From Perkinsus chesapeaki ATCC PRA-425 (lineage: Eukaryota; Protista; Perkinsozoa): a stretch of DNA of 52,443 nt. Below, piece by piece: positions 3,547 to 40,128 of the stretch; the stretch's first letter is position 1, and every line of letters begins with the position of its first letter. A model generated the notes under the pieces. It saw only the letters and a list, made by a program, of their open reading frames with translations, ran no database searches and was not told the origin of the DNA. The stretch spans positions 1 through 52,443 of the forward strand of contig JAAPAO010000209.1 in assembly GCA_013115145.1 (NCBI GenBank). Reading direction: 5' to 3'. Both the position numbers and the translations under genes were made by a program.

Positions 3547-3710
3547 TGTAGTGAATTATCCGAACCCAATGAAATACAATCTTGAGAGAAGAACTTGACT
3601 TTTTACGTTCATAAAATTGCATTACAAGGCACTAGCGTCACGTTATGCACAACACAGAAAATGGGACAATTATTGTGGAATGAGGTATCATATCTGGGAC
3701 AATCTCTACA
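3547..3710 (-). repeat. 5' LTR, 164 bp
   Basis: Minus strand starts TGTAG at 3710 and ends CTACA at 3547 (perfect 5-bp terminal inverted repeat). The PBS follows one nucleotide later. No second copy seen. Confidence 0.65.
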
Positions 3711-4960: not shown

Positions 4961-5059
4961 GTAAGGTGAAATCATCTTGGTAGGATTGACACGACCGACA
5001 AAGAAAGTTGTACTCGATCTGCACCAACTGAAGGAAAGGTGAGATGTTGAGATAATGAT

Positions 5060-15686: not shown

Positions 15687-17266
15687 ATGCTATCGGCTAT
15701 CATTCTGTCCGCGATGTTCAGCTGCCAGTTGGCTTTGGTAGCACTCTTCTCCACTCCGCTTTTCCACATTCTCACGCAGGCTCGACTACTCTTGGATCCC
15801 CCCAATCTCGCCACGGAAGCTCTGTTCGCCAGAGTCGGCATGGCTAGCGACAAGTGGCTCGTGGAGGCGGCGTGCCGAGGGCCTAGAAGCCGCTTTGTGC
15901 GGTTACTGAAGCGCGACACGAACGATCTGACAGCCGCGGAGCGCCTCACTTTATTCTGCAGCTTCGTGAAGACAGCGCCAGCGCCTGAGGACAGCATGGT
16001 CAGAACTGTGTGCAATATTGGCGGCAAAAAACAGACGACGAAACAATCGGTCACCTTCTTCTTCTCCGACCACCGAGCAGCGATGACGTTCGCTAATGTG
16101 TGGGGCAACTACCGTAACTTCCGCACGCCGAAGGCGCTGTCTGCGGACGTGCCCACCGACATTGCTCAGAGGCAGGAGCTGGAGACCTGGGAGGAACTTT
16201 TGGAAAAGGCCAGAATTAAGGCGATGGATGCTGATGATGAAGTAAGTGATTTGTTGGAACGAATCGGTTTGAGAAAATCCGCTCTCATATGTGCGTCCTG
16301 ACGATCAAGGGACCTGCTCCGCCTTGGCGAAGATGTTCGGCTGCCAAAAATTTCCGCCCAAATTCGGCGGTCACTTACCGCGATCGATGCCTTGCTGCTC
16401 GCGTCTGCCGCCTTTCCCTTCTTCATTACTGATTGTTGCCTGTACTGTAGGTAAATCTGGGCACACCGGTGAAGTTCGTGACAATTGGCGACTCTGAAGA
16501 CAAGTTCGTGCTGACCAGAGCTTATCGTTTAGAGGATGCGAGGATAGCTCGAGTTGTGGAGCATCGGCCTTGGCTGTGGGACATAAAGGAGGACTATGCC
16601 TGTGGTGACGTGGTCGAGGAGGGCGGCACAGTAACGGCGATGTGCATCCCAAAGGGGGGGACAGATGAGAACACAGTGAAGCTCACGTTCCATTTTAACG
16701 ATTTGCAAGATGCTTCGAAGTTCAAGCGGAGATGGGGAGCCCCGCTCCGAAGTGAGCTAAAAGAGGGAGAGTCCGCTGCACCCGTGGACGGGCATCCGCT
16801 CTTTGTTCTGCCTGGGCTGCGTGCTGACGACTTGGAGGCGGTAAGCGTTGAATCTGGTGTCAGTTTTGCTTACTGCAGTTTGACTAGGATGGGGATGACC
16901 GTGGTGAAAGTACTCTTGAAGACGGGCGGGAGGGTAGTGCAGTAGTGCCGTCCTCTCCACACGTGCCCGCGGCGGAGCATCAGGCAAGACCTGATCAAAT
17001 GTGTCGACGAGAGATGGTTTGGACAGGTTGACGCGGTCCCTGAAGACACCATTGAGAATCAGCCAGTGGCGGACTACCCCACGCCAGACGGAGTATATGA
17101 AGCCTAGCCGCCCCTTTCCTGTGACATATCCTACTTTCAGGAGACACAGCTAGATGATGAGCTACCGAGCTGGTTGTTCCAAGAGGGCCTTTCACTACCA
17201 TCGCCTCGCCGGCCAACAGACCAAGATCGGCTGTATGAAGATCGCTGGTTCCCTTCAATCCGTTAG
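15687..17266 (+). CDS. Cluster gene A: predicted secreted protein with two Cys/WG modules
   Basis: Signal-like MLSAIILSAMFSCQLAL. Modules end FFFSDHRAAMTFANVWG and FHFNDLQDASKFKRRWG. Paralogous to the N-terminus of gene B. Confidence 0.7.
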
Positions 17267-17649
17267 CGTCCTCAGTCAATATTTGACTAAGACAGTTCGA
17301 GCCAGTGGAATGCAACATCATCCTCCTTCTGTAATCGTGCACTCGTACGGGACTTCCTGTCCCAGTAGGTCAGTTATCACTTAACCCAGCAACGCTCTCG
17401 ATTATGTCATGCCCCTATTGTTGTTGTAGTCACAGTTGTGTGCTGTGGAAGTTGTTCGCTAAAGTGCACGAATGCTAGGTTGTGTTGGTCAATGTGAAGT
17501 TGGCAGGCAGGCCCTCCGGCGTCTCTAAGGCTCGGCATCCCACGAGCTGTCGCTCGTAGCCATACTGCACCTGGTGCACACTGTCTCCCGGAACCCATAC
17601 GTGATCGTCTGTTTGTAGTTGTTTTGTCTGGTTCTGTCATTACATTAAG

Positions 17650-20600
17650 ATGTTGATGTCACCGGGCCTTCGGGCCCTCCTACTTATCGCCGCATCGCTG
17701 GCGAGAGGGGTGAGAGATACGTCACAAAAGCGGAACGGGGATGCTTTCTTTAGATACAGGCGAAATTAGATCCGCCGAATTTAGCGGCGAAGGCGCTCTA
17801 CGCGCACATCGGGGACGATCCGGAGAAGTGGGAAGTCCTGACGGCCTTCAAGCGTGGAGGAAGTCGGGCAATGAGAGTGAAGACCAGAACCAACTTCACT
17901 GATAAGACGTTCCAGCCTTACTATTGTAGCGTGGCTCAGAGGGCACCGGCGGAGGGCTCCAATGTGGCCACGACGCTCTGCAACAAGCCTGGTGGGAAAC
18001 CGGGAGATAGACGACCGGTTCACTTCCACTTTCCGACGCACGAGGATGCTGTGGAGTTCGCGAAGGTTTGGGGCAACCTGAATCGATATAAGACACCGGT
18101 GGAGCTGTCCAAAGAGATACCTGATGAGGAGCAGATTCATGAGGATTGGGATGAAGTTCTTAATCGAACTCGAGCAAACATTGTTGAGACGGACGGCATG
18201 GTAAGCTCTTTCGAAAGCCTTTGACTGATCAGTCTTGCTTAGGTGAATTACGCTTGGCCACTGAAGTTCGTGAGAATCGGCTCCGATGCCGATAAGTTCG
18301 TAGCGACCCACGCATATCGGCACGAGGGAGCCCGTGTGAGGCTGGTGAAGCTGGCTGAGCAGAAGCCGTACCTGTGGGACATACAGGAGACCTTCTACTG
18401 TGACGAGCTGCCGCCGGACCCCTGGGGGAAATTCGTTGAGACCAAATGCGCACGACCGAACAACCTGGAAAAGAAATATCTGTTTGTGTTCAACTTTGAC
18501 ACGCAGGAGGATGCTGCCTATTTCGCCAAGCACTGGGGAGCACCTTTCCTTGACACTAAGAAGGAAGAAGATTCTGAGGTCAACGTGGCCGACGGAGCGA
18601 AGCAGGCACCTGCGCGTGAGCTGGAATCCGGTTACAAGGCGAATTACGGTGGTCTTGCTGGAGATGGGGGACATGCCGACGGTGAAGAATCTGCAAGGAG
18701 CTCTACTGTTTATGACATGAAGAGCAATGTTGGTGAAGCGGGCGAGTGGGCTGGCAGTGAAGTGAAGCCACCGGTGTTCGGGGAGATGGGAGGGGCTGTG
18801 GCCAGCGGCGAGAGCCAAGCTGATGGAGAGAAGTCTGGCTCGACCCCTGAGGACACCGAACTGGGCAAGGTAGTTGTAGAAATTTTGACGAGGTTTACTT
18901 GCTAGTTTTTCAGGAGGAATCAGGACACACAGTGCCGGAGGAGTGGGAAGCTGACCAGGTAAGATAGCTGCCGACAAGGGAGAAAGGCACGAGAGCCCTA
19001 TTAAATGTTGCTCGAGATGAGGCGCGCGAATTAATCTCTGAGCAATTCAGTTTGCTCCCGGCTGAACACAGATTGCGAAGGTACCACCGCCTACTATCGA
19101 CGAGCATGATGATGCTGCTGCTGGCAACGAGGAGGGCAGTATCGATAATGAAAAGGAACTTGTGGTGAGCATAGAAGACTTCTGCCATTGCTCGTCGCAC
19201 CAGCATCAACATTGATAACCGTGTGCTTTGGACTAGTCAAACATTCGAACATCGTTTTTTCGGGAATGTCATGGTCCAGGACTCTGTCGTGTTTTAGGTG
19301 GAGCCCTCCGATTCGGATCAGCCAGTAGAGAGATGGAAGAAAAGCCAGGTAGGCTACTCGTACGGTACTAGATACGTGAAGGACACTAGTAGAGCCTGTA
19401 AAATAGTTTGCTTTAAGCCTACGGCATTTATCTGTGACGTAGAGACGAATCCTTATCAGTGCAGCGTTGGAAGGGACCTAGGGAGGATTCCATATCGAAC
19501 TGCTCAGGTCGATGCTCCTCATCGACCGGCTGATCTCGACGACTCGGAGATTCTGGAGGAGCAACAGTCGAAGGAGGCGGACGGTGCATTGCCGCCACAC
19601 GAGTCGCCTACGGAGAGCGGTGTGGATGATACGGAAGAGGAAGGCGTCGGAGTTGATGGCGGCGTTGAGGTAGGCTCATCTAGAGCCCTTTGTGGTTGAA
19701 CTCCGCGATCAGGAGAACGTTGAGTCTCCTTCCACGGCTGATCATTGGGAAGCCAGCAAAGTGAGCATGGAGTCTACGGGCCGCCGTTGTCGGTAATCAT
19801 TTCGTTTCAGGTATCCGACCCTTTGATTCCTAAGAGTGACGCGTCGGAGCAAGGAGATGAGGACGACGAGGGTCTGCCCCCACCAGTCCTACCGTTCGCC
19901 TCGGACGAGGCTGATGGTTCCACGGAGAGTGCAAGTAGCGACGCTGAGCAGGTACGGCAGAGCTGTAGCGACCAAGCGTGCTTTATCCTTGTCCATCAGT
20001 CTCCCGAGTCTTCCACCACTGGGTCGTCATCGGCACCCGCTTGGTCGGCGGGGAGTGTAGATAGTCCGACGATCCCAGATGTAAGTGAGAGGGGGGGTTA
20101 AGAAGAAAATGCCCGCCTGGAATCAGGCCGTAGATCCACAGTATGCAGAGTACAGCACTCCTGAGCCTGCTGGATACGGAGACATGGAGGACACCACGGT
20201 AGGACGTGACTGCAGAAGAGGCTCTTCTATGGCCTTTATTCCTAGGATCTCAACCACGACAAATTCCCGACCTTTGATGAGCAAAGCGACGGCGCTAGCC
20301 AATTTGGCAAGGAGCATACAGCCGCGCAGTCGGGTTATGAAGACGCAACTGCGAAGGATTCAGCGGTGAGCTCAGACTTGTATGGTTCAGTTCTAAACTG
20401 GTAGAGATGTACCATCGCAATCTCCGCATCTCAAATTGGTGTTGAATGCCTTCGGTGAAATTTGGTATGATTAATTATGACAAAGCCCGTTCGCTCCTCA
20501 GGACCCATTCGACGAGATGGAACCGATTTCTACGGAGCAGGAATCTTCAAAACATTACTCCAAGTCGACATCATCATCACCCAGCACCGCCACCTACGGC

Positions 20601-23600
20601 AATCCAGCTGCCGTCCCCGACGTGAGTTCCTCAACGGGTGTCTGACTGTTAAATCCCGGCCTTCCAGGTTCCACTGCCACCAACCTTTGCTTCGACCGAG
20701 ATGGAACAGGACCCTTCTCAGTTAGAGACGGACGAGGAGGAGGGCATGACGCAAGATGCCGATGACGAGGAGGAGGAGGAGGGCATGACGCAAGATGCTG
20801 ATGACGAGGAGGAGGAGGGCATGACGCAAGATGCTGATGACGGGGAGGAGGAGGGCATGACGCAAGATGCTGATGACGAGGAGGAGGGTGCTGTTGACGC
20901 TTTCAAAGACAAGGTAGCTTTAAATCCTCTTTACTTTTTATTATCTCCATCTTGTTCGGTTTCGGCTCCAAAGCCAGATGATACGTAGAGCGCTGAGCGT
21001 GATTATGGAGGACTAGAAATTCGCTCCCGTTGTGAAATTTCCGGCCGGTCATTGTTCACCAATTTAGCTGATGGGTTAGTAACGTCGCAGTTCTGCATCG
21101 CTTAGGAGCCTGAATCAATCATTCCGGTGGCGGAGCCTACAGTGGAAAGGAGGCTACAAGGCACCGAAATGGAGGACGTTGCTGAGGAGCCTACTGCTAA
21201 CGAAGAGACGTCGGAGAGCCAAGACGGTGCAGCCGAGAAAGAGGAGGAGGAGAACGATGTCCCTGAGGGTCTGCCAGAATTCGGAACTAGCAGCGATGTC
21301 GCCGATGACCAAGTAGCCGGGACTCGGTGGTCGTGGTTCCGCGGTGATAAAGATGCTGTTTCAGAGCGATCAGATCACAAGGCTTTCTTCCGGCGTTGAC
21401 GAGGACTTTTCGCCTGGGGACGAGGTGGGGGCCTTCTGCGATGCAGACTTGTGGAATTTGACAATCATTAGGAGCAGGCTGTCGAGGACGGACCGGAGCT
21501 GAAGCAGTTCTCTGACGATAACACTGACAACAGCGCCGCGGAAGTAAGGAAGTTGACAGCACCTCACAGTGGCATTCCCCGCCAACCCCACTAACAGGAC
21601 TTTAGCGCCGGGCTCGATTAGGGGGAAACATCGTTGGCTCTATACCAGGTTTTTTTCAGAGCATCCTTGACACTGAAGCTAACAGTAAAGATCAACTTGA
21701 AGCGGACTCGGATGCAGTTGATTGGGATAACGAAAAGGACGCAGAGGAGATTCTGGACACTGGTGGAGCCTCCGATGATCAGGAGGTAGCAGCGCCACTT
21801 CGCCATCTCTGCTGCACTGTCCCAATCCTAGGGTGGCCAGCTGCAACGACTTGCAACTTCGGTTGAAGCTGATACGTCATTCGTGCCAACACAGCAGGTG
21901 AGGAGGAGGCGAGTTCGTGTCGAACAGAGAACTTGGTCGTTGGCTGGTTAGGCTGGGTTCGGCACTTGTCGAGAATTCCGCCCGAAGCACAGCTACAGGC
22001 ACGGCAAGATCACCGCTTTCGATACACAAGGAAGGAGATTCAAAGTACCTCGCGGTCTCCTGCGCAGCCTCCAGAGTGGGGACTGTGTTACCATTTTAGG
22101 TTCGTCGGCGTTACAATGGAGAACCAGAGACTGCGTCCTGCGAGGCGGTGGCCGTTCGACCGAAATACCGCGAGGATCTGAACGACTGGCTCATCCCGGT
22201 CCAATGCCGCTTCATTGGCATTAGTGGTGTCGAGACTGTCGAGGGGAAAATAAGATGCGACTCAGAGTACGAGGCGAGGACTCTGGCTAAGGAATGGGGA
22301 GGCTTTGACGTAAGTCCGGAAGGTCCGGGGTTCGAATCCCACGGCCTGCAACTCAGGATCCTTCTTGGGTGCCCGGCCCGCCTCAGATGCGCGATTTGAG
22401 CAGCATGAGGCTGCCGGATGGATCCGACAGTGGCAGTGGCTACTGGTATTCATACGCCGGCGGTTCATGGGGAAACCATGATGAGGTGAGGATGTAAAGT
22501 GAACGACGGCTGATGTTGTGACGTTCAGGCACAGAACCTCGCGACACCTCTAAGCCTAGGAATAGCGGAGGTAGGCCGGGAAGGTTTTGATGATACGAGC
22601 TGGTTGATGAAGGTTTTGAGGGATTGTATATTTCGATAGAACTATGTNNNNNNNNNNNNNNNNNNNNNNNNNNNNNNNNNNNNNNNNNNNNNNNNNNNNN
22701 NNNNNNNNNNNNNNNNNNNNNNNNNNNNNNNNNNNNNNNNGATATGTGTTGATAGAAATGATATGTGTTGATAGAAATGATATGTGTTGATAGAAATGAT
22801 ATGTGTTGATAGAAATGATATGTGTTGATAGAAATGATATGTGTTGATAGAAATGATATGTGTTGATAGAAATGATATGTGTTGATAGAAATGCGTCATC
22901 ACTGCCAGTGATTCACTGGTGAATAATGCCATCATTCAGTCGTGTAATAAGCTCGTTGCCGACTTCTCCAAAGGCCAAGCGGATGACATCGTAGACTTTG
23001 ACATGAAGACCAGAAAGCTTACGGTAAGGCTCGTCAGTGCGAGGATCGAGCAGCTAGATGGTTGTAGATCATCCCAACTAATATGATGCTTCCATTGAAG
23101 CTCCAGTGCAAACCAGTAGATGTCCCTCCAGAAGGGAAGGGGGCGACTTGGCTGGTCCGCGTAGATTGCAAAGATGCAGGAGGTAAGCCCCAGATTTCAT
23201 CGGTCTACCGAATTAAAGCCTTTGTATTCAGGTCACGGACGGTCTGGAGGAGGAGTTGTTATCTGTGGTAATCGCGCTGATGCTGAGCAACTGTCGAGCG
23301 TTTGGGGTGGCTTCCACGTAGGAGACATCTTCGCAGGGCTCTTCCAGGAACTGCGTGTCAGGGCGGTGGCGAGAGTCGGTCAGAAGGTGGCGTGCGAGGG
23401 GGGAGCTCCTCGCATTCGTCGGGGTGGTTCCAGCATGTGGTGATGTATCGAAAGGAGGAAGTGAGAACGACGACGACAACTCCGACTACCACGACCACAA
23501 CGACCACTACGCAGCCTCCGAGCAGATCGTGGTGGTACCAGTTCAAGCACTTTGAATGGGCTGGCTTCCAGACGGTAGCGGCTCCCGAATGCCACTGGCT

Positions 23601-26600
23601 GCTGCTGAACCTCTGCATCTTAGGCTGTGACGACTACTACTACAACCACAACCACGACGACCACTGCTCCGACGACAACGACAACTACCGAGAGAGTGAG
23701 TTGGTGTGTTACTCATTACCACTATCGGTTTCCTACAGTCCTTCTTTGGGAGCTGCCAAGAGGTGATGCCGATGTCGAACTCGAAGCTGATGCCACAGCA
23801 AATCGCTCACTTCGCATTCGAGAACCGTGGCCTTTCGGTGAGTCCGTCGCTGTTGTCTAGCACAATTGCCCGTCTCGCTTCCAATTGGCGCAGGAGAGCT
23901 CTTAAGTTTGAAGCACTTTTCACGTACACACGCCCTTATATTACAACATTGATGTCTTTCAGGTCTTACCGTGGGGAACTAAGGAAGGCCGAGGTCACAT
24001 GATGAGCTGTGATCCGGTCCGTGCGCCTCCTACAAAGCAGAAGGATGGTCGCTACAGAGTGTCAGCCAGCTGCTACTCAGCGGCATCGGCCTCTTCAAGA
24101 GCTCATGCTGAGAGCGAAGAGGAGGGCATCGTTTGTGGCTCGTATTGGGATGCACAACTCCTTGCTGTTATGTGGGGGGGTTATGAAGCTGTAAGTGATG
24201 GGAAATGTTGCTCAGAGCTATCAGTCCACTGCATAGCAGCTCATCGGCTTTTAATCTTGAGAATTCTGCGATGGATGCCGCGTTCTGAAATATAGTGTCG
24301 AGGAAACCACGCGCTCCTACACGTGGCTCTGTAAGGCAGCGTCGAGTCTTCTTCCTCTTAGCAAGCGCCTCCAACAGAACCGCCGCCAACTACGACAACT
24401 ACAACGACCAAGGCTCCTCGAGTCCACAAGCAGCAGTCTGCCTGGTGGATGGTGCACACTTCTGGCGGGTACACGTGGAACCACCCGCCCACGGTGAGGC
24501 TCTGATAAGTCAGAGGGCTGGTCAGCGGCATACTGCATCCTTTCAGCCGAAACCGACCACAACAACTACCACTACCACCACAACGACTACTACTCGCAAG
24601 CCCAGGGTGAGCGAAACCGAGCTGTCTGTCAGCGTTTGGACGGTGTGCATCAGACGAGGTACCGCACTTGCGAAGCCATGCGTCCGGATTGGGCCAAAGG
24701 TGACCAGCTTGACGAACTTGTTGACATCGTACCGCAAGGGCGGCAACTCCAGGTGGGATATCCTGCCTTGTAAGATAGCTGATGCCCGTTCGACAGGTGC
24801 GCCCGTACCTCGCTAAAGGGCTGCTCTCACTTACATGCGACCAAGTGACGGAGTTACCCACTGAAGATGAAGACGATCAATGGTCGGTGCCGGTGAAGTG
24901 TGGAGACTTGGAAGGTGCAGCGCGCAGATGGCTGCTGCCCCCTGAAAGTTTCCGTATCGATGTCGATAGGTCAAGGATTCATCAGCCAGGGTAGAATACG
25001 GTGTGCCTCCTATTACGACGCTCAGCTTCTGGTTATGCAGTGGGGTGGATACACACCGGTGAGCCTCACTACGTAGCCTCTGCGACGTGATAGTCTTTCG
25101 CCAGCCTACTACGACCACAACGACGACGACGACCACTACCACGACGACCACCACAACTACTACAACGGCAGCCAGAGTTCACCAGCGCTCTTGGGGCTAC
25201 TACTTCTCAGGATACGGCTCTCACTCTCAGGCAGTTGTAGGGCTCTTAATGTTGGTGTTATAATGCTACTCGACTGTGTTAGGCGCCACAGACCACTACG
25301 ACCACCACAACAACGACGACTACAACCACGGCAAGAGCTCAGCAGCAGCAGCAGTCGTGGTATAAATACTTCTCATCAGGATACTGGTCCCACTCTCAGC
25401 AATCTGTAGGCCAACTCTAGGGCGTGCATCGGTGTTATCCTTATGGTAGGCTCCTCAAACCACGACCACCACTACTACAACGACAACCACAACGACCACT
25501 GCTGCTCCGACAAAGGTATCTGCTAAACAAAGGTTCACTGAGTTGACGGGTTTGCTTCAGGGCCGCTTCGGTAGCTGTGTAACGCTGCAGCAGGGGCGAG
25601 AAGTGGCGATGAGTAGATCGTACGAATCTTTAGTGGATGCGCTACCATCAGCTCGAGAGCTTATGGTAAATCCTGATAGGAGTGGTACGCAGCTTATATC
25701 TCTACGCCAGGTTATGCCGAGAGGCGCTCATTATGCCCGCTCGATGTTCTGTGATAGAGTACGGCGCAAACCGACGTCATGGCAAGGACAATGGTACGTT
25801 CCCGTGAACTGCCAAGATGAGAAGCGTAACGCCTCAGCTGATTGGACCTACACCATTTTGTTGTGCGCAGATCCTGAGAACTCGGGCGACAGCAACGTCG
25901 TGTGTGGTTCGTACTGGGAGGCTGAAATGTTTGCCATTCTGTGGGGTGGCTACAAGCCGGTGAGATGAAGAGCAATTTCCGGCCAAAAACGATGGTCTTG
26001 TAGGGTCGTTCAAAATTCACTTGACAAGATAAATTCCTCGCCGCGTTTCGTACTCTTGCTTCTTCGAGGGGATGAATAACCCTCTGGCGACCGCGTCAGA
26101 AATTTCAGAGGCTTCGCTCGAGATTTCCATGATCCTTTCTATGCTAAGTTGTGCGCACATGAGGGGGAAATTTTCCAAAACGCATGTAGTTGCTTTGCCT
26201 CAGGAATTGCCACCAACGACAACAACTACCACAACCACGACCACCGCTCCTACTACCACAACAACCCAGGCTCCGACCAATAACGTGGGATGGTGGGGAG
26301 GATTCAGGCAATACCTCTGGAAGGTAGGCGAGCAATGGCTCCTTCCGTGTGATGCAAGTGATTCATTTCAGGCCTCAAGCTGGTCCGAGTCCACTTCAAA
26401 TGAGAAGGAAGCTCCGAAACCATTGCCGACTGCTCCGTCGGTCACTGCTAGACAGCAGGTGAGCGGCCAGTATCAGGCGCCGGGGGGCGATCTACTCTGG
26501 CAGACCCGTTTTCCGAGCTGCACAGCTGCCCGGAGAGAATTCGCGCCGCAGGGTGAAATGGACGAGGTCGTTGAGCTCTCGAGCGACGAAAGGAAGACTG

Positions 26601-28508: not shown

Positions 28509-28988
28509 AAAGTGATTGCTGTCAAAATCGTCCAGTATATTGCAATGCCAGCGGTTGCAAGTAGCCTGGCCAGTTGTCAGTTGTTCGGATGTATTCCTGG
28601 TGTCCCATGTTGTACGGTCATATCTAGATGTGCTTACATACACTGGCATTGGGTTGGTTAAGGGAACCGAAGTATACAGCGGTTTCTATGCTCTCGTTCG
28701 GGCAGCGCATTCTGGCAAAAACACTGTACTTTATCTCTATCTCCACGAGGTCCGAATTCCCGTCGGGAAATGTCCAAGTCGAGTTCGCAATATACCCGCA
28801 CCGGGTTCATTGCGATGACCGACTTTAAGCCGATACGAGAACCCGGAAAACTCAATAAGCCCGAAAACGGAGATATATATTACCACTCAGACGAAGGTTA
28901 ATCGTTGAGGCTCCAGGGATGATTTTTCTTCGTACAGGCTTACGCTATATGATGACCTCGTTATTAAGCTTTGTTTGTTGTCTATATA

Positions 28989-31900
28989 ATGCACTGTTGG
29001 CTATTAGCCATCGCCCTTCCCATAGTAGGAGGTAGCGATGATGTTTACGAGGCGGTGAGCTAACAATCCTCAATGCCAAAATCGCTGTTATTTTTCGGTT
29101 CAGAAACCAATGGAGGAGAAGCTTTCCAATGCTATGTGGGGCGCTCTGCTGGGGCCGGACGGGCATCTCAATGTAGGAATATTCATGCTGCTAGGTTATC
29201 GTCATTGCCAGGCTCTTGAACCTACCAATCTCGACAACGGAGAAGCGTCCGCTCCGACCAGCAGCCCTCTGAGCCCGGAGGAGATCGCTGAGGAGCTAGC
29301 ACTTCCTGCAGACCAGACTGATGAGGCCATGCAGCAGACGACTACAAGCACACCGCAGCCTGCTGTACCAGAGACGACATCAACGACTGCGGCCCCTACT
29401 AGTGGAGATAAGACCGTGCCTCAGGTGAGCGGTGCCCCAGCTATGAGATTCAATGATTGTCCTCATGGCAGGACCTTGAAGCCTTCGTGACATCTCTCGG
29501 CCCTGCGGAGCTCCGCGTGAAAGTTGTCCTCTTTACCGCTAGGGTGGGCAGCACAGAATTTGTAGAATTCTTTCTCACTGGGATTCTCAGGACTGCAAGT
29601 CGTGCGAGGCTCTCCAGGATATTCGAGATGAGGCTGACAGGTTGTTTTCAGACGAGTAAGGATCGATCATGCCTCGTAGGCAACTTCTGGACTCTTCTAG
29701 GTCGGCGGACTTTATGCCAGTTTCATGGGAGTCACTGTACTGCGAAGATCACTCTCTCAACCAGCCAGGTGGGCAAGCCCATTCCAACTTCTCCGGTATA
29801 TTCCTCTGCTAACGCGAAGTCGTCACGTCTTCTTGGTTTCCCCATCCTTTACCTATTCGGAAGGGTGCCGGAGTCCAGGATGAAATCATCAAACACGCGG
29901 CTTCAGGTCCCGACAAAGCATTTTGCGATGCCGCCAACGTAACCACCTTACCGGAGCTCCGCCTCTTCGTCGTTGATGAGGAAAACCAACACGTTACGCT
30001 GGCTGCGAAGTAGCTAATGAAGCGGCCATCAGCCGCCACTGTTTCGGATCAGGTTCGACACTACCAAGCCAACTGCAGCGCAGCTCCGAGACTTTGTACG
30101 TCAACGAGCGGTGAGCCCGGGGATCAGCTTGACACTGAGGAGGAGCGACTCCTTGGCTAGGCGATTCCCGATAAGATCGAAACGTGCAAGAAGATAGTTC
30201 ACCCTGTGGATGGCAAGCAGGAGCTGGTGATGACGCAAGCACAGCAGGGATGGATTTGGGTAGGACCTGCCGAGGTGATGCGATGTGGCTAGTGCTGTAC
30301 TCAGTACCGTGGTGAAGGGAGCGAAGAGAAAGATCTGATAGCCGAGAAATGCAACGGAGGCGGCGCGGTAGAGCTAGATGGAGACCCGCCCAGTTTGCTG
30401 GTCACATGCAAGGCCGGGGAGGTCACCGTGACCTGTGATAGCAAGGAAGATGCGGACAGAATGCAGCAGCTACTCAACGATGCGGTAGGTTTATGAGGCT
30501 GTGAATCCGGGCAGTTGTCATTTATAGGCACCAATGAGCACGTCGGCGGCTTCAACAACGGAGTCTATGCTACCGACCAGCACCACTGGCGCGCCTGTTG
30601 TTGAAGAGAGCCCGGATGCTCAAGCCGACGATACCACGGAGCGGGAGGGAGAGCCGGCTGCTGATGATGAGGATGAGATGGCCGAAACGCCGGATAGCAG
30701 CTCAGAGGCGGAGGCGTCGACGAACGGACAGAAGGAAGAGGGTTCGGTAGAGAAGGAGGCTTCGGAAGGAGATAGCAGCGAGGCTACCAGTGACGAGCAT
30801 GCTGATCCGCCCGAGGAGACAGAGGATTCGGCTACAGCACAGGATGAATCGACGGCAACTCCGGAGAGTGAGACAGAGAGCCTCGGGAGCGTCGATGATA
30901 GCACGGGAGAAGATATGTCCGTGCTGGAAGGACCAATCACGACGGAGAGCGCAGAGGGTGCCGATGGGGAGATTCCTGAGGAGGGACGGACAGAGAGCCG
31001 GGGAGAGTTTCCCACTGTGGGCGAGGATGGTGTTGATGATGAGATATCCGAGCCGTCGAATAATACAGACGAAGATATCCAAGAGAAAAACGATCAGACT
31101 ACACCCGACGCTCAGGAGACTGAAGTGAGCGGAAGCGAAGAGAAAACCGATGATAGCAATCTCGAAAATACATTAGGAGTGGTGTCGCCACATGAGCCAG
31201 CAGAGAGTGATGAGAAGAGTACGAATGAAGATATGACCGCGCCCGACATTGAAGAAGCTGATACACCGTCTGCGGAAGAGATGCAGTCAGCCGAGGATGC
31301 AATGACTGGCCTTAAAGAGCTTGAAAGTTCATTCTTACCACCAGATCTTCCTACGGATCTTTCACAACCCAATGAAGCCATTCAAGACGATTCTCGTGAC
31401 AATACTGCTCTCGGAGAGGCAGCTGGATCGGATGGAGAGAAGTCCGCTGTTACTGTGCTTGATGAGGGCGGCGTGCCCGTGCCACCGGCTGACGATTTCG
31501 TTTTAACGAATGCAGAAGAGCCTAGCGAAACGGTGCCAGAGCCTATTACCGATGCTGTCATACCGGGAGAGAGACCCGTCGGCTATCCAGATGCTCCGCA
31601 AAGCAGCGAAGAACCTGACGATGTTTCCGGGGGAGCTCCATCTGAGAATAATTTGGTAGAGGATGCGCCTCGTCTTCAGACTGAGGAGATAGACTGGCGG
31701 CCAGACCTCCCGGACGTGCCAGATTTTTTGGATCACCGTACTGAGCACGAAGAGTTACCGATCGTGAGATATACAGTTTGCTCTTTCATTCGTGTTAAAG
31801 TGATGCGTATCAGGTTACCGAAGACGAAGATGAAGCTGCCGATGATGATGATGATCAGCCTTTGAACCCATCGGACAATCCACTGAGCGAGCTGGGGGCC

Positions 31901-33124
31901 ACCGACGAACCAACGAGACTTCATTCCGGACTCGATCCTGTAGAGGATGTGAAGAATGCGACAACTGATGATTCCGGAGATTCTGAGGACAAAGATGATG
32001 ATGATGAAGGTGATGGTGATGGTAAGACTAGCTGATGATGTGAAGTTAGCCGATGAGTTCACAGTAGGTGGCGATGATGAGGAGATTTCAGTGGACGACT
32101 CTGATGAAGATGAAAACGACGACGAGATGCCAGTTCTTAACTTTGATAAGGAGGATGAGGAGATCTCCAAACAGAGCACTGAGGAGGATGATAAAGACGT
32201 GGCACCGGCATCTGATATTGACGAGAATGGCGACGATGATGAGATCGATGGAGGTGCCGATAATGGTGACGAGGACAGAGGCGCACATTCGTCAAACGAA
32301 GAGAATGCTAAAAGGCTCCAAGGAGCCCGGACCCTTCGAGGAGTGATACCCACCGACGATCCCACTCCACCAGGATCGCAATTTTCATCGTTCACGTTCA
32401 CGTCTCACACATGGTCATCAAACGACCCTTGGCATGGTGAGCTGAAATGCTAACAATCAAGCGGGGTAATGGATACCTGATCAGGCACACTACCACCGAT
32501 CCTACCCGGTGAAGTCGGTGGCGCGCCGAAGATGATATTCTCAAATCCTTCCTCGGATGAACGTAACCACTCCACGGAGGTAAGCCGGACATGCGAATAG
32601 CTACCCACCGCTATAGCGGTTTTTACTGCATCATTGAAATCTGCACTATAGAAGCGAACATGCTTGGTATACACCACGCTCTTCACATACAGCCTGTCTG
32701 AGCGGTATCTCTCTAGGAGCACCTGAGAGTAGTCTCTCTGTCTAGCAGACGGGTGCACTGTTCTGAGGTTCCCCGCAGAAATGCAATCTAAAACGGTCTG
32801 AGTCCCCGAGCTGCTTGCTCTCAGGTTAAGATCTTGGCCGATACCATGCGCATAGTCCTCCAGCACGTGGGGGCATCAATCGTCGGAGAGGACATCTCGG
32901 GGAACAGTGTCGTCATTTACTTCCCCACGGATGATGCCGCACATGAGGGTTTCGGCCTTCTGAGCTCTCGCATCCGCAACGTAGGTTCTCGTAAAATGAA
33001 GCTTCTACGGCACTTGGTTGTTTTCCACTTCAGACGGAATTCTATCGAGATGGATAACAAGTCTTACTATCTCAAGAAGTACACCATTGCGGAAGCCTTT
33101 TTATCTTTTATTAACTTTTACTAA
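28989..33124 (+). CDS. Cluster gene D: predicted secreted acidic low-complexity protein with a Cys module and the shared C-terminal domain
   Basis: Signal MHCWLLAIALPIVG. 443-codon E/D-rich ORF at 30534-31865. Module end VTCDSKEDADRMQQLL. C-terminal IVGEDISGNSVVIYFPTDDAAHEGFGLL. Confidence 0.6.
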
Positions 33125-33191
33125 CTGGCTTGAGCTTCATCTTTCCATCAGTTGCTTTACCACTGTCTGCTTACATGTTGATGTCGCGCGG

Positions 33192-36100
33192 ATGAATGTA
33201 TCCACCATAGCTGTTCAGTTCTCAATGCCTTGCACGGCGGGATTTCAGCTGTTGGTGTTGTTAAGCTATGCTCCGCTCGTATACCCCATTCCTTATCTTC
33301 ATTGCTGCTATAACAAGAGGGGAGGTAAGAGTGTGGCAAGATGCTGGCTGCTCTAGGCTTCTTTCCTAGTATCTATTATAGACAGTCTCTGAGTGCCGGG
33401 TGTGAGTTTACTTATCTGCATCTGTAGGGATACTGTGATCTAATTAATACTGTATAATATATTATAAGTACGTACGTTAAGGAGGATTATAGAATGTGCC
33501 AGGCTTCATCAGGGGCTCTCATATAGCATTAAAGAAACGTGGAAACGACCACCGGCCTCCCGCAGCTTAGCAGACGGCTGAGGAGCATGCCTTTCTTTTC
33601 AGACTAGAAGTCACCCCGATGGTGATCTTGGCCCAGCTGTTGCAGACATCCCAGGCATGCCGGAGATACCTAATCTCAATTTTGGACAGGATATCAATTT
33701 GCCGGAGGCCAAGCCGATGCCTCCTGTTGAAGCCGGGCCACAGCCGTCAGGACAATCTCTCCCTACATTCACTGACGCTGCTGCGCCAGCGGTTAGCCGT
33801 CTGTCTAGCGGTGTGGAGGAAGATGAGGTATGTCCAACGAGCCAAACAAAACTCCAACCGCCGCCGCATCTGTGATCTTCACGTCATTCCCAGGCGCAAA
33901 GCACCGGTCCCTCTGCACCACGAGAAGAGTTCCCAGTGATGGATACGAACCCCACAGCTTCTACCGACCACTCGGTAAGCTCCAAGCCGCATATCACACT
34001 AATGCTTCACCTAATTATTAGGTCCCTTCTGAAGCTGAAAAGCAACAGTCGTACGACGCCATGGCACGTAATGAAGTTGACGAGTTGGCCCCAGAGCCCC
34101 CGACTGACGAGGAGGAGATGATGAGCTACTCGGTTGGAGAACCTGCACACGCATCTTCTGATGTTGCTCAAGAGCTGGTGAGCGAAGATCATCTTGAGTT
34201 CCGTTTTCGCTCGTAGCTGCCCGCGTTTCATTGCTAATGCGGCATTAGCAATGCCGTACATTGCATTGTTGCAATTGTTGCCGTAGCATTAACAATTGAT
34301 GTCATTAATAATGCCTATACTTTTAGGCTCCCGAGCAGGAATTTGAAACACCCGAGGTGGACCCTGCCCAGGTGAGTTACCGGGGCACGTCGCGATCTGT
34401 CTGATACATCTTCTAAGACTTTTAAGCGGCTTTGGCGCAGTAGGTAGCGCGTAGGTCTCATAATCCTAAGGTCGCGAGTTCGATCCTCGCAGGCCGCATT
34501 TATCCCAACGTGCTTTCTACTTCAGAAGCACGTTGCTAACCCCATTCCGTGCACGGACGAAACACCTGTCTCGGATGATGAACAAGCTGGCCAGGTTGCG
34601 GAGAGCTCTTCTAATGACGAGGAGGGCACCGTCGCTGACGAGACCGTCAACCCTGTAGTTCCCGACGACCCGGATGCAGAGGACGAATCCGATCATATGG
34701 AGAGTGAAGACTCGACCGAAGATGACGATGCACTGATGGATAGCGATGACGTTGAGGGAAAGGACAATGGGAATGAAAGCTCAGCTAGCAGTGCTAACGA
34801 TGAAAACGAGAGTTCGCCTGACGATGAAAGCGCGGCTGATAGCAATGAGGAGACAACGGCCGATAACGACGATGAGAGCGCGGCTGATAGCAATGAGGAG
34901 ACAACGGCCGATAACGACGATGAGAGCGCGGTTGCACACGACGGAGAAAGCTCTACTGAAGACGAGGAGGAAAGGCCCACTGATGAAGGCGAAGAGACTG
35001 AGGAAGACAAAACCGAAGCTGGGTCGCTGCCTAAGGTGAGTTGGGCTGGTTAACAGTGTCAATAAATCAATAATGTTAGGCTGACCAAAAGGCTGTACTC
35101 TCTGTTTGCCCATTCGTATCGATTGATCACGGTGAGCTTGAGCTCGCCAGCAAGATCGAGCCGGCTTTCAAAAGAATCGAGGTAGGCATAGCGAACATAC
35201 TACGGTTAGCATAGCGTTCCCTTCCTAGGTGGAAAACCAAACCTTGCTGTTCTGCGGGAATGCGCACGCGAACTCGGTGGCCGTGTCTGGCTACAGTGCC
35301 GTAGCGATGATGTGTTCCAAGGACGCCGAGTCGGATCAAGAACTTAAGGTTGCTGTGCTCTGCAGAGAAAAAGAGTTCGCCGAGTCACTCATTGCTGGAT
35401 GGAACTGGGACACTGATGAGGTACCGAAATCTACACCTGCATGCTGCCGATGAGGGTGTTCTGTCCCAGGTGAGCTCAGACGGTGAGAGCGACGCAGCTG
35501 ATGCATCTGAAGAAGATGACGAGGAAGCAATCGAGAAGGCTGAAGACGACTCGGCCGACGAGGATGGTGATGAGGCAACAGGAGAAGCACAACCCCAAGA
35601 TAACGATGATGAGCAGCCAACAAGCGACGGTTCAGACACCGTGCAAGAAAATAGCGCGGCAGAACCCCAGATGACAACTGTGAGTGCTACTCCAGGCGGC
35701 CGAGGTAAAGTGCAATGTTTCAGGCTGAAATCCTTGAACACTGCCCGGCAGTGTCCTTTGAGGGGCATCCCTATTCGAAGATATCCACTTTCTGGGACGG
35801 CGGCGTCATGGTGAGATTATTCTTGCTTTCAACGCGTCCAGAGAAGTTAATGCAGATCCCTCACGTCGCCAGTGAAGGAGATAAGCAAGCCTCTGACAAG
35901 ATCGAGTGCGCGGGAGCCAAGTCTCGCCACGAATCTGGCGCCCGCTACCCCGAGGTTTCGGCGCTCTGCCGGGAGCCCGGCTCGGAGGGTGCATTCGATA
36001 CCTGGGTCAGCCTCAAATGCTTCAACAAGGAGGCGGCCAACACCGTTGCGCGCAAGTGGAACACCTACTCGGTAATTCCAATTTATACTCAGTTGAAGTA

Positions 36101-37586
36101 ACAACCATGTTGTGTGTCAGGACGCCAGGATTGCTGCTGGTTGCAACACGGTTAACTTCGGAGATCGTAAAGAAACCATCAGCGAGCTGAACAGTGATCG
36201 CCGGGAGATCGAGGTGAGCCATTGTTCTGGATTCTCTGTCAACGCAGAGTAATCTTCAGTTCGTCAACGCCAGCAGCGCAGCCCTACGCTGCGACGCTGC
36301 CACTTCTCTTCCGACTGATGCCGGAGCCCTCCCCATCAAATGCGATGGAGTCAGCGTTGAGATTCTGTGCTCCTCGCGCAGTGCCGTATCCTTCCTCGCT
36401 GCCGAGTGGGACGCTCCTGTCTCCCACCCGAGGCCCTCGCCACCTCCGGACGTGCCCCAAGTAGGACATTCCAGAAGGCTGAATTAGTTACCCAGCTTTG
36501 TCGCAGGATGAGCCGGAGCTACCGCCCGCTCCTCCCTCATCGGAGCGCCGTGAGAGCGATGTCAGAGCTCATCGTGATTCACCGTTGGTGTACCGCGGTT
36601 GGCCACCACCAACTCCTAAGCCCAGCAAACAGTTCGATGCTGTCACGCCTAGGGTGGGGAATCTTCGCGATCGGATTTCTGACGGTGTTGCTTCAGGCTG
36701 AGCATGAAAGGTGCCCTCAAGCATCTGTTCTGGGCGCTGGAATTGTCGAAGTGAAGAACATCGACAAGGGAGCGATTACAGTGAGTATCTTCACGCACGT
36801 CGCTAACGGCAAACTTCGAGCGGCACCGAAATCTGGAATCACTTTACAGTCATCGCTTATCACCGGGTGCTAACTCGGATTCTTATCAGGTCGAAGTTCC
36901 CGACACCTCCTACTTCCAAAGCGTTGGTCCCCAATTGGTTACCTACGAGTGCACAGGCCTCAACTTCCCACCTCGGAGATTGGCAGCTCGCTACACTGTC
37001 CGTCAGCTCTGCCGTGACCCAGCAGTGCCTACTGCTCCCAACTACAGTCTCAGAGTATCTCTTATCTGTGATGAGAAGGGAGATGTTGAGGAGGCTGCCG
37101 ACATGTGGGGCGTCCCTGCTCCCATCAATGACGTGAGTCTCGCCTGCATTCTCCCATCGAAAGACTTTTCATCGTAAACCGCTTTCCACAGTGTTGATAG
37201 AACTAGTGAAAGTGATTTGCTTTTCAGAACTCCACGAGCATCACTCTCCCCGCTGTAGACGCTCCGGAAGGGATGTTCGTCGAGGTCGTGGACCACAACA
37301 CTGGTCATAAGCAGTACAAGCAGCTTGTCGTTAACCCTACTGAGGCGGAGAAGTCCCAGTTGCAGCAGCTCAAGCTTAATTTAAGGGCCTTGAAGCAAGG
37401 AGACAAGAGCATCATTGGCGTGGATACCGAGAACGACAAAGTCGTCATCCATACCGGAGAGAACCAAGTCGCCCAGCACATACTAGACGCTCTAAAGCGT
37501 AAGTGCCAGTAACCTGTCCTCGAGCCTGTCAACCTTACCCTTCAGATGACGCCGGTTCACTGCATGTTAGAGCAGCAGCAGCATGA
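33192..37586 (+). CDS. Cluster gene E: predicted secreted acidic protein with three Cys/W modules and the shared C-terminal domain (start uncertain)
   Basis: Module ends VLCREKEFAESLIAGW, LKCFNKEAANTVARKW, LICDEKGDVEEAADMWG. C-terminal VVNPTEAEKSQL...IIGVDTENDKVVIHTGENQVAQHILDAL. Confidence 0.6.
34426..34498 (+). tRNA. trnM-CAT: tRNA-Met(CAT), elongator type, intronic
   Basis: Acceptor GCGGCTT/AGGCCGC, D-arm GCGCAGTAGGTAGCGC, anticodon arm TAGGT-CTCATAA-TCCTA, T-arm GCGAG-TTCGATC-CTCGC. 73 nt. Confidence 0.97.
34820..34931 (+). repeat. Coding tandem repeat, 48-bp unit DDESAADSNEETTADN x ~2.3
   Basis: Direct repeats visible at 34820, 34868 and 34916. Confidence 0.95.
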
Positions 37587-37741
37587 AAGCATTAGTTTAT
37601 GTACTTGTTGTGGTGTACAGCTGTCCCAGTTGTGTGTTGTTCTGTCTGGTCAAGTTGTCGCTGTAGCGGTACGCTGTTGTGTTTCGGCTGATTCTTTGAC
37701 ACCTGTTCCGTAGACCCTTCCATCCGGCCCCTTTACACATT

Positions 37742-39423
37742 ATGATAGCTAAGGCACTCTATTGCATATCTATACTGATGACAGCCATTTCCACAGTAAG
37801 GACAGCTGCGGCGCAGTTAGTATCTTACGAATCCGTTACGTTCCAAACCGCACAAAGCTCCCTTTCACGGACTAGATGATGAGAAAAAAACAGGGCAATC
37901 TTCTCCCCTGCTCTACAGTTTGAGCGACCTCTGACATGCCTTTTCGTTTCCAGGAAAGAAGCTCTGACGACGCCCATTCTGCTGGCGAGGCCACGAAGAG
38001 CTCTTTCTTGCAGAGCTTCCAGTTGCCCGATATAAATTTCGGCGCCCTCCCTGGATTTGATTCCGCTGTCCAGAGCGATGATGCTCAGCCTCACAGGCTT
38101 TCAAGCTCAACGCATGAAGATGTGAGCGTCTCGCTGTGCTGTAAATTCCTCAATTATAATATATCAGGGAGCAGACGAAGACCGATTCCCCGTTATCTCC
38201 GGAGCCGGCCAGGCAGTTGTTGACCATGCGGTGAGCGCACCCTACTGTGATGGTGCATGGAAGCGGCATGTTCTAGGTTCCTAGTCGACCTTATAATAGC
38301 GGTATCGATTACGACGCTCTGGCCGCTAGTGAGATGGACGATGATGATGCTGCCTTGCAGGAGTTGAGGGATAACCAGAAGGAGATCCAAATGGACAGCG
38401 CCGATGAGGATGAAGAAGAGGAGGACCAGGCCGCTGCCTCTCCTCCAGTGACTACAACAAGGAAGCCTGTGGCAACCACTAGTACGATGACGACAAGACA
38501 AACAACATCGACGACGACAACGACAACAACTGCCATCTCGGAGGTTAGGATAAGATATTTCAACATCTATTAGGAGGGGTTCGTTTAGGCTGAAACGACG
38601 ACAGAAGCGCCGGCTGTGGAGTTATCTGAAGAGGATGGCGAAATCACACCAGCTGCTCCTTCAGAGGTAAGAATCTAAAGTAGATCGAGTACTTTTATTT
38701 CTTCGATGTCAGCTCGAGACCGCACCGCCCTCCGCAGAGCAGGTTGGCAATGATAAGGTTACCATTAGGGTGAGGATGGACGTGACCAGACAGCGGGATC
38801 TTACTGTTAATTTTGCAGGAAGAGGAGCACGTCAAAATAACTGGTGAAGACGAGCATCCGGTTACCATTACGAAGGTCGATAGCAGCGCGTTAGGAAACA
38901 GAACTGCGAGCGATGAGCAGAAGAAGCTGGTCGATTTATCCGAGGAAGAGGGCACCGTCGCTCCTTATCAGCACAGTTCTAGAAACGTAAGAACAGTTGC
39001 GACGAAAAGTTAATATGGTTGTGATATCAGAAGACTTCGATTCGGCCTCGAGGAAAGCTATCGATTGCCTCTTCTGCGCCTACTCACCGACTTTCACGGC
39101 AGTCAAGCGAGCTCGCCGAAAAGGAGAGCGCCGTGGTGGTTGTCAAGGACCGCAGATCTGGCAGCGTCACGAACAAGCTGATGATAGTTAATCCTACTGC
39201 AGAGGAGAAAAAACATTTAAAGGAGATTGTTCTCCTCACCCACCCATTGAGCGTCACGACCAACGCTATCCACCTCAAAACGGTCGATGGCGACTCAGTG
39301 GAGATCCGGACCACACAGTCTGGACAATCAAAGCTTGTTCTTGCTGCCTTGATGAGTAAGCAGCTTTCCTCATCCCTCTCACTCGTATGCAATCGGTTGT
39401 TTTTAGGCACCGGTAAGAAGTAG
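37742..39423 (+). CDS. Cluster gene F: short paralog of gene E lacking the internal modules
   Basis: Signal MIAKALYCISILMTAISTVRTAAA. QLPDINFG...RLSSSTHED matches E's EIPNLNFG...RLSSGVEED. Thr tract present. C-terminal IVNPTAEEKKHL...DSVEIRT...VLAAL. Confidence 0.65.
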
Positions 39424-39548
39424 AGCTTTCTCCTTGTTACCTGTGTTGCTGCCATTTTGGCGCCATGTTCGGTGTTATGTGAACCATTTTACTTTGAGTT
39501 CGAGAGTAATTAACTCCAAAACACAAGTCCCACTCGACAAGACGTAAA

Positions 39549-39989: not shown

Positions 39990-40128
39990 AATGGGTTTTC
40001 TGATCGTTCTGATCCTTTCCCAATAGAGCAACTCAACAGTATACATCCAAGTGTTGTTGATACTAGTGTCCTATCGTTACTCAATCTCTTACTCTCTCAT
40101 CATAATAAGCTTCGTAAACTCCCAACAC

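What the first reader, a model, noticed from the sequence alone, without database searches (positions are those of the whole stretch)
15687..39423. 24-kb cluster of five secreted-protein genes built from an apparently unnamed repeated Cys/WG(G) module
Seen: about 15 copies of a roughly 60-90-aa module, often with the pattern C...W.V...C...[IV].C....A..L...WG(G). Module ends: FANVWG, FKRRWG (A); FAKVWG, FAKHWG, IRCDSEYEARTLAKEWGG, VICGNRADAEQLSSVWGG, IVCGSYWDAQLLAVMWGG, IRCASYYDAQLLVMQWGG, VVCGSYWEAEMFAILWGG, IVCGTYWDAQFLSILWGG, IVCSSFWDAQMLSVLWGG (B); VTCDSKEDADRMQQLL (D); three in E. Modules are separated by poly-Thr or D/E-rich stalks. Genes A, B, D and F have clear signal-like N-termini, and no obvious TM anchor was seen. 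I recognise no named domain. Inference: a lineage-specific extracellular system (cell wall, adhesion or host interaction) with disulfide-bonded beads on glycosylated stalks. This is the best candidate for an undescribed system in the window.
Basis: partly seen in the sequence, partly recalled or inferred. Interest (0 to 1): 0.78.

Follow-up and report, generated by a model that had tools for sequence, protein, structure and literature searches.

The report
Perkinsus secreted proteins with unnamed PH-like domain
A shellfish parasite (Perkinsus) has a row of five related genes for secreted, mucin-like proteins built from a repeated cysteine-bridged domain of about 105 residues that matches no named family. 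The domain is predicted to fold like a PH domain, and it also builds gene arrays at four or more other places in the genome.

Summary
Sixteen Cys/WG modules lie on the + strand between 15.7 and 37.2 kb: A 2, B 2+7, D 1, E 4. They are clearly related to one another, and two partial "hypothetical proteins" of Perkinsus olseni are orthologous.

Corrections:
- The module is the back two thirds of a domain of about 105 aa.
- In gene B each unit is three exons with conserved intron positions.
- B, D, E and F all end in a second shared domain without cysteines.
- The assembly gap sits beside a perfect 19-nt minisatellite with stops in all frames. It is non-coding, probably an unusually long intron. 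Continuity across it cannot be shown.

No named family matched in Pfam, PDB sequences, the ESM Atlas, a profile scan of 1.84 billion proteins or a metagenome scan.

Two independent AlphaFold models gave seven strands plus a C-terminal helix. All 50 best structural matches for each were PH-like folds, but with Z of only 6.1 and 6.8. This shows shared topology, not homology.

The family is not private to this cluster: 35 matches fall on five contigs.

Verdict: a real, unnamed, apparently Perkinsus-restricted extracellular domain family. Its function as coat, wall or adhesion protein is inferred.

The parts
15687..16945 (+). Gene A. Signal-like leader, then two A-type domains at 15789-16139 and 16451-16756, separated by an intron of about 210 nt starting at donor 16242.
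   Evidence: ORFs and translation; alignment A2; AlphaFold model of 15789-16139 with pLDDT 79.9 and pTM 0.76.
17650..28429 (+). Gene B, if it is one gene. Signal exon 17650-17709, intron 17710-17753, A-type domains at 17763-18107 and 18243-18557, acidic low-complexity region about 18560-21860, seven WGG units, then a Cys-less C-terminal domain.
   Evidence: No second signal-like stretch lies before the WGG array, and in-frame GT-AG joins from the acidic region to unit 1 exist. The single-gene reading is inferred.
21955..22309 (+). WGG unit 1. N-part exon about 21955-22045 (FGTC motif); core 22118-22309, ending WGGFD followed by GT.
   Evidence: Matches the Logan-assembly ORF P0009 (origin unnamed), 59% identity.
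22648..22893 (.). Assembly gap 22648-22740 plus a 19-nt minisatellite of 8.1 perfect copies at 22741-22893. Non-coding; lies between donor 22486 and the next exon near 22932.
22932..23317 (+). WGG unit 2. Exons about 22932-23023, about 23102-23182 and 23232-23317.
23690..24190 (+). WGG unit 3. N-part about 23690-23837; core 23963-24190, with no internal intron.
24530..25058 (+). WGG unit 4. N-part about 24530-24751; exons 24797-24914 and 24976-25058.
25552..25959 (+). WGG unit 5. Exons 25552-25664, 25710-25825 and 25871-25959. Both introns are 45 nt, in frame and stop-free.
   Evidence: Orthologous to P. olseni KAF4686147.1 (P0002).
26492..26908 (+). WGG unit 6. Exons 26492-26605, 26654-26774 and 26820-26908. 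The introns are 48 and 45 nt and in frame.
27409..27820 (+). WGG unit 7. Exons 27409-27504, 27548-27677 and 27726-27820.
   Evidence: Orthologous to P. olseni KAF4722504.1 (P0006), whose model has pLDDT 87-93 over this part.
27942..28273 (+). Cys-less C-terminal (CT) domain of gene B. Exons 27942-28088 and 28154-28273. 67-91% identical to P. olseni.
28989..33000 (+). Gene D. Signal exon 28989-29054; one Cys module (N-part 30161-30289, core 30293-30493); acidic region 30528-32450; CT domain about 32792-33000.
33600..37512 (+). Gene E (start not found). Acidic region 34448-35050; four E-type modules at 35229-35429, 35889-36080, 36266-36424 and 36926-37129; CT domain 37216-37509; stop at 37510-37512.
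37583..40026 (+). Gene F. Signal-like start at 37583; acidic and poly-Thr exon 38277-38540; CT-type domain 39115-39355. It ends either at the stop at 39421-39423, or after donor 39356 in a candidate last exon 39914-40026, which is a GPI-signal-like tail.
   Evidence: The TACTAAC branch-point match just before the acceptor at 39913 supports the extra exon, which is otherwise inferred.

Best explanation
The region is a tandem cluster of five paralogous genes of a Perkinsus parasite. They encode secreted or surface, partly mucin-like, modular proteins.

The building block is a domain of about 105 residues, found so far only in this genus. It is predicted to be a seven-stranded beta-sandwich closed by a C-terminal amphipathic helix that ends in Trp-Gly, which is a PH-like topology.
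- One conserved cysteine pair is present in every one of the 20 copies aligned.
- A second pair, one Cys in the first strand region and one in the last strand, is present in all seven WGG units and absent from all four A-type copies. This fits a disulfide joining the two strands that close a PH-type sandwich.

In gene B a three-exon unit was duplicated seven times. The copies are spaced by poly-Thr stretches (probable O-glycosylated stalks) and by a short Gly/aromatic motif.

B, D, E and F also share long acidic tracts and a Cys-less C-terminal domain. F may be GPI-anchored.

Most likely role (inferred): components of the parasite's extracellular coat or wall matrix, or adhesins. The stable disulfide-locked domains would be displayed as binding beads on extended, glycosylated or acidic spacers.
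For: Shown:
- The copies are related to one another.
- P. olseni orthologues are 50-90% identical, so the reading frames are conserved between species.
- Intron positions and phases are conserved in all units.
- Signal-like leaders are present.
- Poly-Thr and acidic tracts are present.
- The C-terminal domain is shared: pairwise E 3e-7, 9e-6, 6e-4 and 2e-3.
- The family occurs on five contigs.

Predicted:
- Two AlphaFold models made from different subfamilies both gave 6-7 strands plus a C-terminal helix.
- For both, all 50 best matches among 48,161 chains were PH-like folds (PH, RanBD, EVH1, PTB). The best were Z 6.8, rmsd 3.0 over 97 residues, and Z 6.1.
- Foldseek also put PH, PTB and RanBD first for the WGG unit.

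No named family was found.
Against: - Structural Z values are below 8, the level the tool itself calls common background. The models rest on 4 and 21 sequences, and the N-terminal half of the WGG-unit model is weak (pLDDT 48-72).
- Foldseek on the A-type model ranked lipocalins about as high as PH-like folds.
- Secretion, glycosylation and location are untested, and no transcript data were available.
- Gene models are hand-made. Continuity of gene B is unproven across the acidic region and across the gap.
- The profile used in the one large search still contained columns translated from in-frame introns, so its reach to distant relatives was reduced.
- No P. marinus protein was found. This may be a limit of the searches, not absence.
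Confidence: 0.6

Rival explanations
1. The same proteins are not coat or wall components. They are cargo of secretory organelles, or released products that act on the mollusc host (binding haemocytes or plasma lectins, immune evasion). On this reading the domain is a host-ligand binder and the family is expanding under host pressure.
For: The genes are multi-copy, clustered and diverged: 15-35% identity between subtypes. The WGG modules are only about 50-60% identical to P. olseni, while the C-terminal domain is up to 91% identical. Signal-like leaders are present. An array on contig C3203 is flanked by papain-like protease genes.
Against: There are no expression, localisation or binding data. 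Poly-Thr and acidic spacers and a possible GPI tail fit a surface or matrix role at least as well. No selection analysis was possible without orthologous DNA.
Confidence: 0.25
2. The module is a very diverged member of a named extracellular domain family, for example Ig-like/PKD or SRCR. On this reading it is only apparently unnamed.
For: 45 bacterial PKD/Ig-like repeat proteins matched the WGG profile. From memory, the stretch 'VC-x-S-x-W-D-A...G-G' looks a little like the SRCR core.
Against: The bacterial matches cover only profile positions of about 15-55. That stretch is one beta-hairpin motif plus columns I later found to be translated introns, and their scores add up over many repeats. 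No Pfam family, PKD and SRCR included, matched any module at E up to 1-10. Both models have a C-terminal helix and a PH-like topology, not an Ig or SRCR fold.
Confidence: 0.07
3. Part of the cluster is decaying or mis-assembled repeat DNA, not working genes. Gene B would then be several fragments or a pseudogene.
For: The assembly gap and minisatellite lie inside B. An intron-like stretch of over 440 nt stands where other introns are 27-80 nt. In P. olseni the gene exists only as partial models on contigs of about 1 kb.
Against: All seven units keep open exons, GT-AG borders at the same phases, and all conserved cysteines. No frameshift or premature stop was needed in any unit. Orthologous exons are conserved in P. 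olseni.
Confidence: 0.08

Closest known systems
PH-like superfold domains (PH, Ran-binding, EVH1, PTB; Pfam clan PH)
   Same: Predicted topology: a seven-stranded antiparallel sandwich closed by a C-terminal amphipathic helix, about 100-110 residues, with a conserved Trp associated with that helix. All top-50 structural matches for two independent models belong to this superfold.
   Different: There is no sequence-profile match. Z is only 5-7. These copies follow signal-like leaders and carry one or two conserved cysteine pairs, so they are probably extracellular, whereas classical PH-like domains are cytosolic or nuclear. Common descent is not shown.
Modular mucin-like surface proteins of parasitic protists (Cys-rich adhesive domains separated by Thr/Ser-rich stalks), known from apicomplexans; stated from general knowledge
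   Same: A signal peptide, arrays of small disulfide-bonded domains, poly-Thr linkers, and sometimes a GPI or transmembrane anchor. Clustered paralogous genes.
   Different: The domain here is none of the usual ones (TSR, EGF, PAN/Apple, Sushi and the like); Pfam finds none of them. Long acidic tracts and a shared Cys-less C-terminal domain are added.
Perkinsus olseni hypothetical proteins KAF4686147.1 and KAF4722504.1, plus FOZ62_019501 and FOZ63_006141 (all partial)
   Same: Direct orthologues of units 5-7 and of the C-terminal domain of gene B, 50-91% identical.
   Different: They are fragments on contigs of 0.6-1.8 kb, un-named and un-annotated. They do not show the array or the cluster.

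Membership tests
PH-like superfold (structural class) | Seven-stranded antiparallel beta-sandwich capped by a C-terminal alpha-helix | tested here: met
   Met on predicted models only. The A-type domain has strands 13-16, 23-30, 35-42, 50-57, 70-77 and 85-91, one short bridge, and helix 95-106. The WGG unit has six strands and helix 127-137. All top-50 VIA matches are PH-like, with Z up to 6.8 and 6.1.
PH-like superfold (structural class) | Structural similarity clearly above background (Z of 8 or more) | tested here: not met
   Best Z 6.8 and 6.1. Best Foldseek E 0.047-0.05.
PH domain and PH clan families (Pfam) | Significant match to a family profile | tested here: not met
   No PH-clan family at E up to 1-10 for any module, nor for P0002, P0006 or P0009.
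PH domain and PH clan families (Pfam) | Conserved Trp of the C-terminal helix packing into the core | tested here: inconclusive
   A Trp lies at the end of the helix in 17 of the 20 aligned modules. Equivalence to the PH Trp could not be checked without coordinates.
PKD / bacterial Ig-like domains | Full-length match to the domain profile and an all-beta Ig-like fold | tested here: not met
   The bacterial proteins align only to a 30-40 column stretch that is partly intron-derived. No PKD hit came from Pfam. The models contain a helix.
SRCR domain | Match to Pfam SRCR, with its 6-8 Cys pattern | tested here: not met
   No Pfam hit. Only 2-4 Cys per domain. The resemblance was recalled from memory only.
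Secreted mucin-like glycoprotein | N-terminal signal peptide | tested here: inconclusive
   Hydrophobic leaders directly after the ATG in A, B, D and F. No predictor was run, and the start of E was not found.
Secreted mucin-like glycoprotein | Thr/Ser-rich tracts that are O-glycosylated | not testable with these tools
   Poly-Thr runs of 10-20 residues lie between units 2-7 of B, and one lies in F. Glycosylation itself is unknown.
GPI-anchored protein | C-terminal small-residue site, spacer and hydrophobic tail at the very end of the protein | tested here: inconclusive
   Such a tail is encoded at 39914-40026, with a branch-point-like TACTAAC and an AG just upstream. Its splicing to gene F would need a 558-nt intron and is unproven.

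The most novel reading that the evidence does not exclude
Perkinsus has turned the PH-type sandwich, otherwise an intracellular fold, into a disulfide-locked extracellular building block. It has expanded this block into more than 50 copies in several gene arrays that make up a main part of the parasite's surface coat or wall. That would give a lineage-specific marker and antigen family.
Probability: 0.35. Interest if true: 0.6.

Novelty: new variant of a known kind. Interest (0 to 1): 0.5.

Why it matters
Perkinsus species cause major losses in oysters and clams, and little is known at the molecular level about their wall and surface.

An abundant, genus-restricted, secreted domain family would be a candidate for:
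- wall or coat structure;
- host recognition;
- diagnostics.

For protein science, a cysteine-bridged, probably extracellular PH-like domain would be an unusual use of a very common intracellular fold.

For annotation, the finding defines a domain that could be added to family databases. It also shows that short in-frame introns in this genome can pass as coding sequence.

Tried and rejected
- **Home-made gene finder:** a codon-usage plus GT-AG dynamic-programming gene finder merged the neighbouring SWEET gene with gene A and missed the WGG array. I replaced it with hand curation guided by P. olseni proteins.
- **Word-index protein searches:** searches with exons of 350 and 204 aa found nothing. 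The length window of that tool may exclude the real, longer proteins.
- **ESM Atlas:** no usable hit for either subtype.
- **PDB sequence profiles:** nothing credible.
- **Metagenome scan:** the family profile had no usable conserved stretch. With the WGG profile, 46 pattern hits were found and none was confirmed.
- **Bacterial PKD/Ig-like hits:** rejected as motif-level matches, partly to intron-derived columns.
- **CT domain as a Cys-less copy of the same fold:** not supported by the low-confidence model, which shows helices in its middle. Left open.
- **Literature:** four full-text searches found no paper describing this family. This is a limited search, not proof of absence.
- I then worked by coordinates only.
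- **Joined exons:** spliced (joined-exon) protein models were not built or searched. All searches used single exons by reference or database proteins.
Full report
**What the DNA is**

The window is contig C1185 of a 41.7-Mb, 3,544-contig assembly. It is eukaryotic, about 50% G+C, with short GT-AG introns.
- Earlier notes of this scan call the genome Perkinsus chesapeaki. I did not verify the species.
- The only true relatives found are proteins of Perkinsus olseni at 50-91% identity. This fits another Perkinsus species.
- Perkinsus is a parasite of molluscs.

Yes.
- One module used alone against the whole assembly found four more copies in gene B, at E 2e-15 to 1e-3.
- Three subtypes can be aligned:
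  - A-type, four copies of 102-117 aa in genes A and B, 24-38% identical;
  - WGG-type, seven copies in B;
  - E-type, five copies in D and E.
- Profile-profile comparisons between the subtypes are weak but in register: P 2.5e-3, 4.7e-4 and 3.3e-4.
- Modules on another contig (C3203) are hit by both the A-type and the WGG-type profiles.
- A joint alignment of 20 modules shows two invariant Cys, a near-invariant Ala and a Trp-Gly at the end of a helix.

I therefore treat all of them as one family.

**The gap**

Positions 22648-22740 are N. They abut 8.1 perfect copies of a 19-nt unit at 22741-22893. That unit carries TGA and TAG, and because 19 is not a multiple of 3 it puts stops in every frame.
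- The gap lies between a donor at 22486 and the next recognisable exon near 22932.
- That stretch is over 440 nt, whereas other introns here are 27-80 nt.
- Both flanks are non-coding, so no reading frame crosses the gap. Whether an exon is hidden in it, and whether the two sides belong to one gene, cannot be decided from this assembly.

**Gene structure**

My own gene finder was too crude. Aligning the spliced P. olseni models to the window and reading the DNA gave a clear picture for gene B. Each WGG unit has three exons:
- an N-part with an FG[ST]C-like motif, ending in phase 0;
- a middle exon (first Cys, Pro, a G-x-W-x-V-x-V-x-C hairpin), ending in phase 1;
- a last exon (a strand with the third module Cys, then a helix ending WGG[YF]xP), followed by a phase-0 intron.

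Units 1 and 3 lack the middle intron.

Five of these introns are 45 or 48 nt long, in frame and without stops: 25665-25709, 25826-25870, 26606-26653, 26775-26819 and 27678-27725. They have GT-AG ends and are absent from the P. olseni models and from paralogous units.

Between units lie poly-Thr runs and a short Gly/aromatic motif of the type G-W-F-x-F-x-x-W-G.

Further points on the gene models:
- Gene B starts at 17650 with a 20-residue hydrophobic leader and a 44-nt intron.
- No second leader precedes the WGG array, and in-frame joins from the acidic region exist. One long gene, 17650 to about 28430, is the simplest reading, but it is inferred.
- Genes B, D, E and F each end in a homologous Cys-less domain: pairwise E 3e-7, 9e-6, 6e-4 and 2e-3. 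This shows that the four large genes are paralogues.
It is preceded by TACTAAC and AG and is a candidate GPI-signal exon for gene F.

Exons were searched one by one by reference.

**What the domain is**

No named family matched:
- Pfam on 20 exons, on three database proteins and on all 20 aligned modules one by one;
- PDB sequences;
- the ESM Atlas;
- word-index searches.

The single large profile search, over 1.84 billion representatives, returned 48 proteins.
- Only three match the whole module: two P. olseni partial hypothetical proteins and one Logan-assembly ORF.
- The other 45 are bacterial PKD/Ig-like repeat proteins. They match only positions of about 15-55 of the profile, which is one hairpin motif plus intron-derived columns. 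I reject them.
- A metagenome scan found nothing.

Two AlphaFold runs were made:
- The A-type domain 15789-16139, from four sequences, gave pLDDT 79.9 and pTM 0.76, with seven strands and a C-terminal helix.
- The P. olseni protein P0006, with 20 rows of window exons and orthologues, gave pLDDT 87-93 over the module and 48-72 over the N-part, with the same order of elements.

Fold searches on these models:
- Foldseek found only weak matches: PH, PTB and RanBD first for the WGG unit, and lipocalins together with PH-like folds for the A-type.
- The Foldseek-independent search against 48,161 chains returned only PH-like folds in the top 50 for both models. These covered 85-105 residues at rmsd 3-4.5, with best Z 6.8 and 6.1.
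- By the tool's own calibration, Z below 8 can mean only a common arrangement.

I conclude a PH-like topology with moderate confidence. I make no claim of homology to PH domains.

One observation fits this fold. All seven WGG units carry both the N-part Cys and the last-strand Cys, and all four A-type domains lack both. In a PH-type sandwich the first and last strands are neighbours. This is 11 of 11 within the window only. Without model coordinates I could not check the geometry.

**Spread in the genome**

The 20-module profile found 35 matches in this genome, which is a lower bound. They lie on C1185, C3203, C3304, C3248 and C1435. Local searches of the fetched stretches show arrays of at least 5 to 12 modules at each of those loci. 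Those arrays mostly have no poly-Thr. The domain is therefore a genome-wide family and not a private part of this cluster. An unfollowed note of this scan describes a 'two-exon, two-cysteine repeat module' cluster on another piece. It may be one of these arrays, but I could not confirm that.

**How it probably works**

- Shown: conserved, spliced, open genes with leaders, paired cysteines, Thr-rich and acidic spacers, and a shared C-terminal domain.
- Inferred: the proteins enter the secretory pathway, the domains are disulfide-locked, the Thr runs are O-glycosylated stalks, and the products sit in the parasite's coat or wall or act as adhesins, at least one possibly through a GPI anchor.
- A role as released host-binding factors is the main rival and cannot be separated from this with sequence alone.

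**Novelty and verdict**

This is a real, un-named domain family found only in Perkinsus. It sits in a familiar kind of protein (modular, mucin-like, secreted) and has a predicted fold that is familiar but unusual outside the cell. I rate it a new variant of a known kind, with interest 0.5.

**Limits**

- Alignments for the models are shallow.
- The large-search profile was flawed by intron-derived columns.
- There are no transcript data.
- The literature search was limited.

Noticed in passing
window 25665-25709, 25826-25870, 26606-26653, 26775-26819, 27678-27725: Five short introns (45 or 48 nt) are multiples of three and free of stops, so retaining them would insert 15-16 residues in frame. 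They sit at conserved positions of the repeated unit and can pass as coding sequence.
   Followed up: partly
window 22741-22893: A perfect 19-nt minisatellite of 8.1 copies lies directly beside the assembly gap, inside an intron-like stretch that is unusually long for this locus (over 440 nt).
   Followed up: partly
window about 22440-22485, 23540-23600, 25170-25230, 25330-25400, 26280-26330, 27060-27090, 27200-27250: After each poly-Thr (or Ser/Gly) linker of gene B comes a short Gly/aromatic motif of the type G-W-F/Y-x-F-x-x-W-G. It is also kept in P. olseni. Its role is unknown; carbohydrate binding or cross-linking are guesses.
   Followed up: no
window 39914-40026: A candidate last exon encodes a Ser/Thr/Ala/Gly stretch followed by a hydrophobic tail and a stop, which is GPI-signal-like. 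It is preceded by TACTAAC and AG. It lies outside the finding's coordinates.
   Followed up: partly
L023/L024 (G000:C3203:5800-12700): A second array of about 12 modules of the same family, without poly-Thr. It is flanked by papain-like cysteine protease genes (about 500-1650 and 14100-15290) and an SRP54-like gene (about 2700-5300). C3304 holds a close paralogue of this array.
   Followed up: partly
window 5957-6292 (-) and 7048-7395 (+): Two ORFs on opposite strands translate to nearly the same protein, so there is an inverted duplication of at least about 340 nt with neighbouring related ORFs.
   Followed up: no
window 14716-15520 (+); 46690-47031 (+); 1969-3555 (-): Neighbouring genes: a SWEET/MtN3-type sugar transporter just upstream of gene A (Pfam E 4e-11); an adaptor-complex medium subunit fragment (E 2e-14); and a 529-aa ORF with a weak zinc-knuckle match.
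   Followed up: partly
window 20727-20887 and 34820-34931: In-frame acidic tandem repeats (36-nt unit x4.4; 48-nt unit x2.3) lie inside the D/E-rich regions of genes B and E.
   Followed up: no
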